This document shows positions 9,622 through 22,594 of a stretch of 64,000 bases of DNA, in pieces. The first letter of the stretch is position 1; every line of letters begins with the position of its first letter. The notes beneath the pieces are model-generated. The model was not told the DNA's origin. It did not search any database and worked only from the letters and a program-made list of their open reading frames with translations. The stretch is from the NCBI GenBank assembly GCA_965285935.1, contig OZ260664.1:96100001-96164000 (forward strand), written 5' to 3'. This stretch comes from Ophelia neglecta. Lineage: Eukaryota. The position numbers were made by a program, and so were the translations under genes.

Positions 9622-12600
9622 CTAAAATACCACACCGATGAAGGACCCAAGTAGTATGAGAAATACGAACAGGAAGATTCTGTCCAAAACCTTTCCAAGT
9701 CTAATCCAGAGCATTTTTGAATCAGGAACATCGTCAATGTCTGATATTTGGTTTCGCTTAGCACAAACGCAAAGAATCCATGTAAGGCTTCTGAGCAATG
9801 CCTGCAGACATCTTGGCATCGTTTGTCTTTCGGTCCCTCGGTTGTGCACGTTTAGTACTAGTACGGTACACAACGTCGATGTCATCAGCATCGCACTCAA
9901 GTATCCAAAGAATAATGCTGAAGTCAAATGAAATCCTTTCTTTGAAAGAACAACAAAATGATTATGTATAGATACGGCCTCGTTTAACGATATACCCGCC
10001 AGACAAAGCAAAGTCATTGATCCGGAAGCAGAACAGCCAACAGGAATTTAACCCAATATAATATAATGCAGTTAATTTAGGTCACAAGGGAATCGTCATT
10101 GTTTTCAATGACCGGTAGATAGGAGATCATATGACATCACCTTTCTTTGAAGTAGTATTGTAAAATCATTGATCAACGAACAAATAAAACCATGCGCTAA
10201 CTGGAGTACAGTCTTTATTCGATAACAGAGTTGGGGAGGCGGTTTTTTGAAGAAAAAAAATTATAGCTATACAAATATAACACTTAACATTCTCTGTACA
10301 AAACAATTGTGTGGCCAATTGCGCTTGAAATTAGATAAAATAAATGAAAAAACTAAGATGTTAGATGAGTTTAACTTGATATCAAAAATAAAAAGCATTT
10401 GATTTCAAACGTAAATTTGCATAATAACACACAACAATATTATAAAATGCTAAGGCTCAAATGTATGCAACGGTGTAGAAAATTCAGGTTAAAGAAAAAA
10501 CTAAATGTAATTATGTGTACGAAAATGAAGGGATTTGAGGAACATGTCTTGTAGTGGTCCACAGCCAAAATCATATATATATAATGAATAGATACTTATA
10601 TACGTGTAAAGAAAAAAACGACACAGAAAAAAAATATTAATTTCAACCAATTTTGTATAGTCTAAAGAGGAAACAAATTCTCCATCAACAGAAAAAGTAG
10701 TCAGCATTTAAACATTTATAAGAATATATTATGATATTTCAGTTATAATATATGCGGAGAGGTGGTGGCGTGGTTATTAGTACCAAATTAATATTTGATA
10801 TTTCTATTATTTGAAATATCAATTTTCAGCAATAATCTATGCACATTAAGGAGTGTGCTGTGTGGTGGTATACTTACATATACTGGGTATCGCATCCGAC
10901 TGTACGGGAAGTATATCTTTTACCAATAGCTGGAACACGGTGGTTGCCAATAGTACGGTGATGGAAAGCGATGTTTTTTCCCCACTTTCAGGTGGTAGGC
11001 AAAACACAGCAACTCCCAAAATTGACAGCATCAACGTTGGTCCAATGACGTTCCAGTAATAGTACAATGGCTTTCTTTTCATATGAATCTTAAATACGAG
11101 CAGAGTCCAATATATATTTTCGTTCGCATTAATGGTATACTTGTGCACTTCTGACCTAGTCAATTTCCATTCCCCGTGACCTTGGGTGTATGACATATGA
11201 AATAAATCACCCGAAACAGGATGAAGTTCCATTTCCTCAATGCGGTATAACCAAGAGGTTATATTCAAGTCGCATATCTGGTCATCGTTTGGAAATCTAC
11301 GCATGTCCAATTGGCATGAAAGTGACATTATCGCTGGGCCTTCCCATGATGCTCTTCCTAGATGGTTTATTTTAATCATCACATTATTCAGGTAGGAAAT
11401 GACAGGTTTGTCGGACAAACTGAAGTCAAAGAGAAGAGTTAAATGCAGTATAATACCTCCTAATGTGTTGTTGGATAAACAGTTTATTTATTGTATGTCA
11501 ATTGATAATCTCAAACACGGGGGAATGAATTTTTTTACATATTGAACTTAAAGTTTTTAGATAGATTTATTCGCTCGTGGCCTCTTTGAGACATGGAGCA
11601 CAAGCAATTTCATAAACGTACATAAAAATAGAAACATGAAAATACAGCCTCATGAACGATGAAGTACAAGAATCTTCTTAATGAATAATGTTAACGAGCG
11701 GAAGATATTAGTGTTACTGATCAGCTGTGTGAATTTCAACATGCTTGGTCTACTGCGGTAATATAATGGGAGCATTTGTCTGCGAAGTAGAACAACTCTT
11801 TCGTCAGTGCATTCTAACAATGCATGAAATTCGCCACCTAGCTTGTTACAACTACATAGAGTACAATAACGTTCCAATCGTGGTACACCAACATATCTAC
11901 CAGTTTCTATAGGTAACACATGGTTACTCGTTCTGAACCGACAAAACTCAATAGCTAGTTTGTGCGGGAGACAATCCAGGTAAGCTTCAGGTTCAAAAGT
12001 ATTTTTAAATGATGCGTAGGTTGTGCACAGTGATCGGTTTGCGATGTCTTCAGACCACATTTGAATATACTGATCTTGTAATTTTCTGTTGACATGTAGC
12101 TTAACCCAAGTGGGATTTAGGCCAGCGGCCTGAGACATAAACATGTTAGAGCAACCACAGTTGTCAAGAATAGACTTAATTTGATATAACCACGGCGAGG
12201 TGTACATTCCTTTCTGGTGCATTTCATAAATATATCTATACAATGTGTAACTAAGTTTACATTCTTTACCGCTTACAAGCCTGGCCCAGAAACCAATCAT
12301 TTTCGTTTTAATATTTACCTCAAGTGGATAACGGCCGCACTCACCATACACCATTGAGGAACACGTGGACGATTTTAAACCAAGGACATATTTACAGTAT
12401 TTGAGGTGAAGCCTCTCCACAACCGTATTGTCAGCATATCCCCATACTTCACATCCGTAATTCAATATAGGCAAAATCATGGTGTCAAATAAGTCCAGAC
12501 GGAGCTTAATTGGTAGATTTAAGATGTTACATCTACTATTTAGAATACAAAGTATACACACTTGTTTTCAATTATGAAATTTGGGGTCCAAATTTCGCTG

Positions 12601-14207
12601 GTAGGCAGTTGTATTGTTTGAGTATCATTATAACTGTCTGGATCCCAATTTAGTAGTTCATCAGTCCATGCCTAGTGTAAATGGCAAAAAAAAACTTGTT
12701 TCTTATTGTTCACATATTTAACAATGATCTCGATATAGGAATACGTCCTGAACGAAATTTTACTTACCAGTTTGAAGAAAAACCTTCCTTTGAATATCCA
12801 GCTTCTCATGTCCTAAAGGAGACGATTTAAAGAATGGGTTATTCATAGTGCAATTCCATCCTGACGCGTGACACTCTTAATCAGAAGGTCAACCATTTCA
12901 TTAAAATTCAGATCGAGTTGGGCAGGGGGCTGTAGTGCGCTATTGCAAAATCAGTAAAAGCACCATATATACAATTCGATATCATCCAATAAAATATCTG
13001 CTTCTCTCTGTATAATTGGGAGTGCAATCTTAAATTTGTTTATAGTTAGTATATTGAATTGTTATAAAGTTTAGAGTAGAAAATTCATTTGCGATATAAT
13101 ATAAAATGCAATATAATAGGCTGTTTTAAGAAAACACAGTTAGTGACAAAGATTATTTATACCACTCTAAGTATCTTGTCAATGCCCAACAATATGGTGA
13201 CATTGGTTGGCTTTTCCTTTGTCAAATATGGGCGGTTGTCAGGGCGATAATTTTGTAGTAAATCCTTTTTCAGTCTCGTTTCCACATGGACATGTGTACC
13301 TAAACGTGACATGTGTGTGCTAAGTAAAAGAAACATCAATATGGTATGAGCTTAATGTATGTGTTTATTGTGGCTACAAACTCAATCTGCTGACGTGTTC
13401 AGGAGACTCTAATGAGGTTCATTTCAGTTAAGTCTCAATCTGTTGCCAAGGGCTTTGTGTTAACGGCGAAAGCGAAAGCTTCGGCGAAAGCCGCATGGCC
13501 TCTTAAATTGAGCTAACATGAACACAATACTAACCCTACCCTTACCCATTTATAACAAAAACAAAATAGAGATTTCTGGGTTAGGTTTGGGTTATAAATT
13601 AACTGATGTTAAAGATTATTGTGTCACCAATGCTGCTTTCGCCGAAGCTTTCGCCGTTAACACAAAGCCATGCCAAGTAACAGCTGGTTGGTTATTTGAG
13701 GCTTTACACACATCAACACTTATGTGGTGATATCGCCAAGTTGCCGACTCGTCACTATGAGCTCAACGCCTCTTTATAGTGTTGCCTCACTGGATTAACT
13801 GCCATAGATACCACACTCAGGGAACCCCATCAAGTAACGGACTAAGGTTGATTAAAACACATGGTACATACATGTAGTAGTTTCGAATTTTGGCCAATAA
13901 ACAGGTATTTTATACACATAGTCTCGTTTCGTTAATTCACAAATATGCTGTATACATAGATTTGAAGTTTGTTGAATAAACATATATGTTAAATGCGCAG
14001 TTGTAAAAAGAATCATATCAATTGCGCCTGTATTATGGGTTATTTAATGAAGCACAAATGTTTTAGAATGTACAAGTAGCTATAGTAATCAAGAGAACAC
14101 TCTGGTAAATCACCAACGGTTACTATACCTTGGGCATCATAGAGCATCATAGAACAGCCTAGTGCAAACCACCACCACCGAGGTAAACCTGTTATAATTG
14201 ACATCAT
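9622..14207 (-). CDS. Cys-loop ligand-gated cation channel subunit A (nicotinic/5-HT3-like, non-alpha type), 6 exons, ~402 aa
   Basis: Exons (minus): 14207-14129 (signal peptide MMSIITGLPRWWWFALGCSMMLYDAQ), 13299-13163 (ETRLKKDLLQNYRPDNRP), 12812-12768 (45 nt), 12671-12562 (110 nt, WTPNFIIEN), 11419-10878 (Cys-loop CQLDMRRFPNDDQIC, M1, M2 GEKTSLSITVLLATTVFQLLV), 9917-9622 (M3, MX, M4, TAG). All introns are GT-AG and phase-consistent; total 1209 nt. The 45-nt and 110-nt exons are typical of nAChR genes. Confidence 0.93.
11562..12538 (-). mobile_element. 5'-truncated non-LTR retrotransposon (LINE ORF2 C-terminus, RTEX/L2-group-like) in intron 4 of channel gene A
   Basis: Open ~300-codon frame with LFDTMILPILNYGCEVWG, YGECGRYPL, LPIETGRY and the zinc-knuckle-like CTLC..EFHALLEC. 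Short 3' UTR ends AATAAA-TCTA. Candidate 6-bp TSD TCTAAA at 12539-12544 and 11556-11561. Confidence 0.9.
13451..13669. mobile_element. Foldback MITE (219 bp) with long TIRs and near-perfect 8-bp TSD, in intron 1 of channel gene A
   Basis: GGCTTTGTGTTAACGGCGAAAGC...TTCGGCGAAAGC pairs with GCTTTCGCCGAAGCTTTCGCCGTTAACACAAAGCC. Internal taaccct/gggtta motifs. Flanks are TTGCCAAG and ATGCCAAG. Confidence 0.85.
13745..13850. mobile_element. Possible SINE remnant (Meta-domain-like core)
   Basis: tttatagtgttgcctcactggattaactgccatagatacc...ccccatc resembles, from memory, the conserved core of invertebrate Meta-SINEs. No tRNA-derived head is visible. Confidence 0.3.
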
Positions 14208-22100: not shown

Positions 22101-22594
22101 TAAATTCACTGAACTATATTCTAAATTGGAGATCACTAAAAAACATAGCGAAAGGCACAACTCGGTGAAAACGTTTTACAGTTGAGATGTTCACATGTAT
22201 GATGCATGTACCTTGCCCCTAGTAGCATACCCCTTCCATTGTAATTAATGTGGAATTTTTTTATGAATTAAATAAGAGACTCATTTTCTTCTCTTTAGCG
22301 TTGTTTTTTGCCTGCCTCTGTACACTGATTGCCCTGTCAACCATTAGTACTGTTCTGGTAATAAGCGTACACAACAGAGGACACGAGGGACAAGAGATGT
22401 CGAGAAGTCTGCAAGGACTAGTCAGATACCTCGCGGTAGTTCGCTGCATTCGTCCAACCGGAAATAAAATTACGGACATTGAGGAATCGCCAGATTATAA
22501 AGAACTCTGGTTTAAACTGGGTAAGATATTGGACAGGGTATTTCTTATAGTTTTTCTCTCACTTCTATGCTTGTGCCTCTTCATTATTCTGTAA
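19197..22594 (+). CDS. Cys-loop ligand-gated cation channel subunit B (paralog of gene A, non-alpha type), 6 exons, ~401 aa
   Basis: Exons: 19197-19272 (signal peptide MVAVKTTLIVIWWLAASLSSNTMVV), 20062-20198, 20599-20643, 20762-20871, 21510-22051 (Cys-loop CHLDMKHFPSDNQVC; M2 GEKISLSITILLSTTVFQLLV), 22299-22594. Introns are GT-AG. Exon 2-6 lengths (137/45/110/542/296) are identical to gene A; total 1206 nt. Confidence 0.93.
20320..20545. repeat. (GACT/GTCC)-rich tetranucleotide-derived repeat, likely part of an interspersed element in intron 2 of gene B
   Basis: Recurrent ctgtccgac, gactgact and gtccgtcc motifs. Confidence 0.5.

What the first reader, a model, noticed from the sequence alone, without database searches (positions are those of the whole stretch)
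9622..22594. Head-to-head pair of orphan nAChR-like cation channels lacking the acetylcholine site: candidate chemosensory or novel-ligand receptor system
Seen in sequence: two intact paralogs are transcribed divergently (ATGs at 14207 and 19197) with identical exon 2-6 lengths. Both keep the Cys-loop, the loop-B Trp (SWLY/SWMY) and a cation-type M2 (GEK, 9' Leu, 13' Val). Neither has loop-C vicinal Cys (KYTINANENIYWT; THIQTGSDGRKWA). Loop A WxPDxxLYN becomes WTPNFIIEN and WTPHVIIEN, and the loop-D Trp position is F in A and S in B. Established: these residues form the ACh aromatic box, and cephalopod chemotactile receptors are clustered nAChR derivatives that lost it and sense other compounds. 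Inference: this may be a lineage-specific non-ACh receptor family, possibly co-expressed and forming an A/B heteromer.
Basis: partly seen in the sequence, partly recalled or inferred. Interest (0 to 1): 0.8.

Follow-up and report, generated by a model that had tools for sequence, protein, structure and literature searches.

The report
Divergent nicotinic-type channel gene pair
Two intact, head-to-head genes in a probable annelid genome encode unusual nicotinic-receptor-like cation channel subunits that have lost most acetylcholine-binding residues; this is real, but it is one more case of the known spread of orphan nicotinic-like receptors in worms and molluscs.

Summary
Two six-exon Cys-loop channel genes face each other. 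Gene A is on the minus strand (14207 to 9622, 403 aa). Gene B is on the plus strand (19197 to 22594, 402 aa). All ten introns are GT-AG, and exons 2-6 have the same lengths and phases in both genes. Both keep the Cys-loop, the loop-B Trp and a cation-type M2. Both lack the loop-C Cys pair, the loop-A Asp and Tyr, the first loop-C Tyr and the loop-D Trp.

A careful tree puts A and B together (100/100). They sit inside a clade with seven paralogs of the same genome that also lack the Cys pair, and this clade nests among nicotinic-type subunits. They are not with the 5-HT3 family and not with the conventional beta-like-1 ortholog. The pair is old and constrained (52% identity, dN/dS about 0.2).

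No ortholog was found in public protein collections, and no RNA data exist. The genome, probably an annelid's, holds at least 90-160 Cys-loop matches. Orphan nicotinic-like receptors of annelids (Alpo4) and cephalopod chemotactile receptors are published. Earlier notes of this scan describe several similar genes elsewhere in this genome.

Verdict: new members of a known kind. The chemosensory role and the A/B heteromer remain untested.

The parts
9622..14207 (-). Gene A, six exons (14207-14129, 13299-13163, 12812-12768, 12671-12562, 11419-10878, 9917-9622), 403 aa
   Evidence: GT-AG introns and an open frame; Pfam PF02931 and PF02932
19197..22594 (+). Gene B, six exons (19197-19272, 20062-20198, 20599-20643, 20762-20871, 21510-22051, 22299-22594), 402 aa
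12564..12590 (-). Gene A loop A: the conserved Asp is Asn and the box Tyr is Glu
20843..20869 (+). Gene B loop A: the conserved Asp is His and the box Tyr is Glu
12777..12779 (-). Gene A loop-D Trp position, here Phe (12th codon of the 45-bp exon 3)
20632..20634 (+). Gene B loop-D Trp position, here Ser
11272..11316 (-). Gene A Cys-loop (C-x13-C). The third residue of the FPF turn is Asn
21613..21657 (+). Gene B Cys-loop. The third residue of the FPF turn is Ser
11107..11145 (-). Gene A loop C: no Cys pair, first Tyr replaced, an aromatic kept at or beside the second Tyr position
21784..21822 (+). Gene B loop C: no Cys pair, first Tyr replaced, Trp at the second Tyr position
10915..10983 (-). 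Gene A M2 pore helix: -1' Glu, 0' Lys, 9' Leu, 13' Val, 20' Asp
21946..22014 (+). Gene B M2 pore helix, with the same ring residues as A
14208..19196 (.). Spacer between the two start codons (4989 bp). An old dispersed repeat lies at about 16468-17470
   Evidence: many copies at 70-75% identity, 1864 first-look candidates
11552..12537 (-). Young retroelement 3' piece in intron 4 of gene A. It is not part of the gene
   Evidence: about 20 copies at 99-100% identity elsewhere in the genome; no Pfam match

Best explanation
A and B are two old paralogous subunits of a lineage-restricted clade of nicotinic-type pentameric ligand-gated cation channels in a probable annelid. Each has a signal peptide, an extracellular domain with the Cys-loop, four membrane helices, a cation-type pore and a very short M3-M4 loop of about 40-50 residues. 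A ligand bound at a subunit interface of the extracellular domain would open the cation pore. This mechanism is inferred from the family, not shown here. The canonical acetylcholine site is dismantled on both the principal and the complementary face, and a Glu sits where the loop-A Tyr should be. The most likely reading is therefore a channel with a non-canonical agonist or strongly altered pharmacology. Its ligand, tissue and partners are unknown.
For: Intact models with matching exon structure. Pfam LBD and membrane domains. The best solved relatives are alpha-7, alpha-3 and alpha-1 nicotinic subunits at about 1e-26, with 5-HT3A close behind. Careful tree: A+B 100/100; with seven own-genome paralogs and one Logan fragment 100/99; next a gene of this genome at C8:61.16 Mb that bears the Cys pair, 99/91; the split of all nicotinic-type rows from the 5-HT3 family is 98/94. 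Pore residues match 91-98% of relatives, while the pocket residues are rare states. A and B are 52% identical with dN 0.38 and dS about 1.9 (saturated); dN/dS is about 0.11 in M1-M3. In exons 5-6 of gene A, the only part examined, the source sample's contigs show only substitutions in the exons, 3 synonymous and 5 mostly conservative; the two indels lie in intron 5. Published precedents: Alpo4 (PMC10338036) and cephalopod chemotactile receptors (PMC11526382).
Against: No RNA run holds the genes, so expression and exon 1 are unverified. No functional data exist. The loop-B Trp and one loop-C aromatic remain, so a quaternary amine ligand is not excluded. The Cys-loop FPF turn has a polar third residue in both genes, seen in 1 of 297 relatives. 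This might impair coupling between binding and gating.
Confidence: 0.55

Rival explanations
1. A and B are accessory, non-binding subunits. They co-assemble with alpha-type subunits into acetylcholine-gated heteromers, as vertebrate beta-3, alpha-5 or muscle beta-1 do. One candidate partner is the related gene at C8:61.16 Mb that bears the Cys pair.
For: There is no Cys pair in loop C. Muscle beta-1 also lacks the loop-A Tyr (alignment). The nearest relative outside the clade is an alpha-type gene of the same genome. The pore and membrane helices are well conserved.
Against: Known accessory subunits keep the loop-A Asp and the Cys-loop FPF turn; A and B do not. A and B do not group with the conventional beta-like-1 ortholog L024. 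No partner has been tested.
Confidence: 0.25
2. A and B are a co-regulated pair that forms an obligate A/B heteromer acting as a peripheral chemoreceptor, by analogy with cephalopod chemotactile receptors.
For: Divergent orientation and an old, retained duplicate pair. The ligand-binding loops differ more between A and B than the pore region does: 49% against 71% identity.
Against: The spacer is about 5 kb and carries a dispersed repeat. There are no expression data. The clade has only nine members in this genome, not a large fast-growing array. CRT1 is not among the 60 best solved chains for exon 5.
Confidence: 0.1
3. The genes are silent or decaying copies without function.
For: No RNA evidence. 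A polar residue sits in the FPF turn. A young retroelement lies in intron 4 of gene A.
Against: Both frames are open over six exons with canonical splice sites. dN/dS is about 0.2 at saturated dS. Structural residues are conserved. No frameshift or stop appears in the source sample's contigs over exons 5-6 of gene A.
Confidence: 0.07

Closest known systems
Alpo4 and other orphan nicotinic-like receptors of the annelid Alvinella pompejana (PMC10338036)
   Same: Annelid Cys-loop cation-channel subunits that are remote from characterised nicotinic receptors. They lack the loop-C Cys pair, have no known agonist, and belong to the lophotrochozoan expansion.
   Different: According to the paper, Alpo4 keeps the key aromatic residues; A and B have lost three of the five. 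The presumed Alpo4 entry (8bx5, titled only 'Acetylcholine receptor') is not among the 60 best solved chains for exon 5. Its relation to A and B was not tested in a tree, because no sequence reference was available.
Cephalopod chemotactile receptors CRT1 and CRB1 (PMC11526382)
   Same: Nicotinic-derived subunits that no longer bind acetylcholine, form cation channels and occur as clustered paralogs.
   Different: That family is a cephalopod expansion expressed in suckers and gated by hydrophobic compounds. The window's genome is probably an annelid's, the clade is small, and expression and ligand are unknown. CRT1 scores no better than ordinary nicotinic subunits on exon 4 and is absent from the top 60 for exon 5.
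Lophotrochozoan nicotinic receptor expansion (Jiao et al. 2019, PMC6896357)
   Same: Many divergent, often paired or arrayed nicotinic-type genes; two-gene arrays are the commonest class in that paper. This genome shows at least 92 exon-5 matches and 160 LBD matches.
   Different: The expanded mollusc genes tend to be intron-poor retrocopies. A and B keep the ancestral intron pattern, including the 45-bp and 110-bp exons.
Vertebrate alpha-7 type nicotinic subunits
   Same: Best solved relatives. Same pore signature. The tree places the clade near rows that their sources name alpha-7 or alpha-10.
   Different: Only about 30% identity. No Cys pair. The loop A, C and D box residues are replaced, and the intracellular loop is far shorter.

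Membership tests
Cys-loop pentameric ligand-gated ion channels | Neur_chan_LBD plus Neur_chan_memb domains, a C-x13-C loop and four membrane helices | tested here: met
Cation-selective nicotinic branch | Pore with -1' Glu, 9' Leu, 13' Val and an outer acidic ring | tested here: met
Cation-selective nicotinic branch | Phylogenetic nesting among nicotinic-type subunits rather than with the 5-HT3 family | tested here: met
   split 98/94. The 5-HT3 anchors were verified. An earlier quick tree on exon 5 alone had hinted weakly at 5-HT3.
Acetylcholine-binding (alpha-type) subunit | Loop-C Cys pair plus the aromatic box: loop A Tyr, loop B Trp, two loop C Tyr, and loop D Trp on the partner face | tested here: not met
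   Only the loop-B Trp and one loop-C aromatic are kept. There is no Cys pair.
Conventional beta-like-1 subunit | Orthology with the Drosophila, Capitella and Aplysia beta-like-1 group | tested here: not met
   This genome's ortholog is L024 at C8:40.1 Mb, which is 72-74% identical to annelid proteins. It forms a separate group that carries the tree's star for high support.
5-HT3 receptor family | Grouping with verified 5-HT3 sequences | tested here: not met
Cephalopod chemotactile receptors | Membership of the cephalopod clade, expression in sensory epithelium, gating by hydrophobic compounds | not testable with these tools
   No chemotactile receptor sequence was available by reference for a tree, and there is no RNA or functional data. 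The indirect evidence is negative: a probable annelid genome and a low rank among solved chains.

The most novel reading that the evidence does not exclude
A and B form a receptor for a ligand class not yet known for Cys-loop channels. The Glu introduced into loop A would act as a new binding determinant. The polar residue in the Cys-loop FPF turn would reflect a re-engineered coupling between the binding site and the gate.
Probability: 0.2. Interest if true: 0.6.

Novelty: new member of a known kind. Interest (0 to 1): 0.3.

Why it matters
The pair adds a well-defined example to the large and mostly uncharacterised set of lophotrochozoan nicotinic-like orphans. It combines loss of the near-invariant loop-A Asp, a Glu at the loop-A Tyr position, and a polar residue in the FPF gating turn. 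Its sister paralogs keep the loop-A Asp and Tyr and have Trp in the FPF turn. The contrast makes a natural pair for testing what these positions do. On its own, it does not open a new question.

Tried and rejected
1. 5-HT3 affinity. A quick tree on exon 5 alone put the clade weakly next to teleost 5-HT3-like and Macrostomum proteins. Longer sequences and a mixture model rejected this.

2. Orthologs. The word search with exon 5 of A found nothing at 1e-20. A profile of A plus B found only fragments of 42% identity or less, and these are closer to other paralogs of this genome. The exhaustive representative search gave at most 44% identity on exon 5 and about 35% over the full length. This absence is weak evidence. 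The word search sees only proteins of 99-315 aa for this query. The one related annelid contig whose source was looked up comes from a low-coverage assembly (contig label '3x').

3. Expression. No RNA run holds the genes. The three listed runs are DNA contigs of one sample; they run continuously through intron 5 and show no joints.

4. Steps left out. The joined, spliced proteins have no reference. They were built and used only inside local scripts for alignments and trees. They were not sent to the database searches, structure prediction, fold search or complex prediction, so there is no 3D model of the pocket and no test of A/B assembly.
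Full report
WHAT IS THERE. ORF listing and Pfam scans show two sets of Cys-loop receptor exons on opposite strands. tblastn of the exon pieces against the window finds exactly two copies of this type. Reading the splice sites gives two six-exon models. Gene A runs on the minus strand from 14207 to 9622 (403 aa). Gene B runs on the plus strand from 19197 to 22594 (402 aa). 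All ten introns are GT-AG. Exons 2-6 are 137, 45, 110, 542 and 296 bp in both genes, with the same phases. The 45-bp and 110-bp exons are the classic nicotinic exons 3 and 4 (my own knowledge). Exon 1 and the start codons are inferred from an ATG, a hydrophobic leader and an in-frame donor.

RESIDUES. I aligned A and B with solved nicotinic chains and with about 300 relatives.
- The pore is canonical: -1' Glu, 0' Lys, 9' Leu, 13' Val and 20' Asp.
- The Cys-loop cysteines and the loop-B Trp are kept.
- The loop-C Cys pair and the first loop-C Tyr are lost.
- The loop-A Asp is Asn in A and His in B.
- The loop-A Tyr is Glu in both.
- The loop-D Trp is Phe in A and Ser in B.
- An aromatic remains at or beside the second loop-C Tyr position.
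- The M3-M4 loop is only about 40-50 residues long.

ORGANISM AND FAMILY SIZE. A conserved paralog exon of the same genome (L024) is 68-74% identical to annelid proteins, 63-65% to cephalopod and nemertean proteins, and mostly 54-63% to gastropod proteins. It groups with annelid beta-like-1 subunits. The genome is therefore most likely an annelid's. It holds at least 92 matches to exon 5 and 160 matches to the LBD profile, both lower bounds.

PHYLOGENY. The final tree has 45 rows and 431 columns, uses LG+C20+F+G4 by PMSF, and reports ultrafast bootstrap and SH-aLRT.
- A+B: 100/100.
- A+B with seven paralogs on C5 (78.64-79.20 Mb) and C7 (71.69-71.70 Mb) and one Logan fragment from another sample: 100/99.
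- Next out, an alpha-type gene of this genome at C8:61.16 Mb and a public fragment: 99/91.
- Next out, a Capitella protein and then a Lingula 'alpha-10': 95/78 and 92/91.
- All nicotinic-type rows against the teleost 5-HT3 family and two Macrostomum proteins: 98/94. The 5-HT3 anchor is genuine.

The seven sister paralogs also lack the Cys pair, and they have Tyr or Asp at the loop-D position. However, they keep the loop-A Asp and Tyr and have Trp in the FPF turn. The loop-A and FPF changes are therefore specific to the A/B branch.

AGE AND CONSTRAINT. A and B are 52% identical, with dN 0.38 and dS about 1.9 (saturated). Identity is 49% in the extracellular domain and 71% in M1-M3. The source sample's DNA contigs show eight allelic substitutions in exons 5-6 of gene A: three silent and five mostly conservative. 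Indels occur only in the intron.

RELATIVES ELSEWHERE. No public protein exceeds 44% identity on exon 5 or about 35% over the full length. The limits of this negative result are given under Tried and rejected.

SURROUNDINGS.
- The 4989-bp spacer between the genes holds an old dispersed repeat.
- Intron 4 of gene A holds a young retroelement piece.
- A third Cys-loop gene, of the anion-channel type, lies at about 46.6-50.7 kb on the minus strand. More matches of the same part of the LBD profile follow within 400 kb.

COMPARISON WITH WHAT IS KNOWN. The lophotrochozoan expansion of nicotinic genes, with paired and arrayed copies, is published (PMC6896357). So are annelid orphans, including loss of the Cys pair in polychaete clades, and the unresponsive Alpo4 (PMC10338036). 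Cephalopod chemotactile receptors are also published (PMC11526382). Earlier notes of this scan list several other atypical nicotinic-like genes in this same genome. I did not test those notes.

VERDICT. The reading 'nicotinic-derived, canonical site lost, not a conventional beta subunit' is supported. The chemosensory function, co-expression and A/B heteromer are untested inferences. I file the pair as new members of a known kind.

STEPS LEFT OUT. They were used only inside local scripts.

Noticed in passing
window 46647-50675, minus strand: A third Cys-loop gene, of the anion-channel (GABA-A/glycine/GluCl-like) type. Exon ORFs lie at 50475-50675, 49662-49862 and 46647-46859. Further LBD matches of the same profile part lie at C7:96.30-96.50 Mb, which suggests a nearby cluster.
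   Followed up: partly
window 11552-12537: A retroelement 3' piece of about 980 bp in intron 4 of gene A, on the gene's strand. About 20 copies elsewhere in the genome are 99-100% identical, so the element was active recently.
   Followed up: partly
window 16468-17470: An old dispersed repeat in the spacer between the two genes. Copies are 70-75% identical, and there were more than 1800 first-look candidates in the genome.
   Followed up: partly
G000 C2:27.08-27.16 Mb (L011-L013, L016, L017, L020, L029): A tandem array of at least seven nearly identical nicotinic-like genes spaced about 11 kb apart. Two exon-5 copies are identical. All lack the loop-C Cys pair.
   Followed up: no
window 34602-35072, minus strand: An ORF with a fibronectin type III domain match, probably an exon of an unrelated gene.
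   Followed up: no
window 18302-18439: Three tandem copies of a unit of about 43 nt in the spacer upstream of gene B.
   Followed up: no
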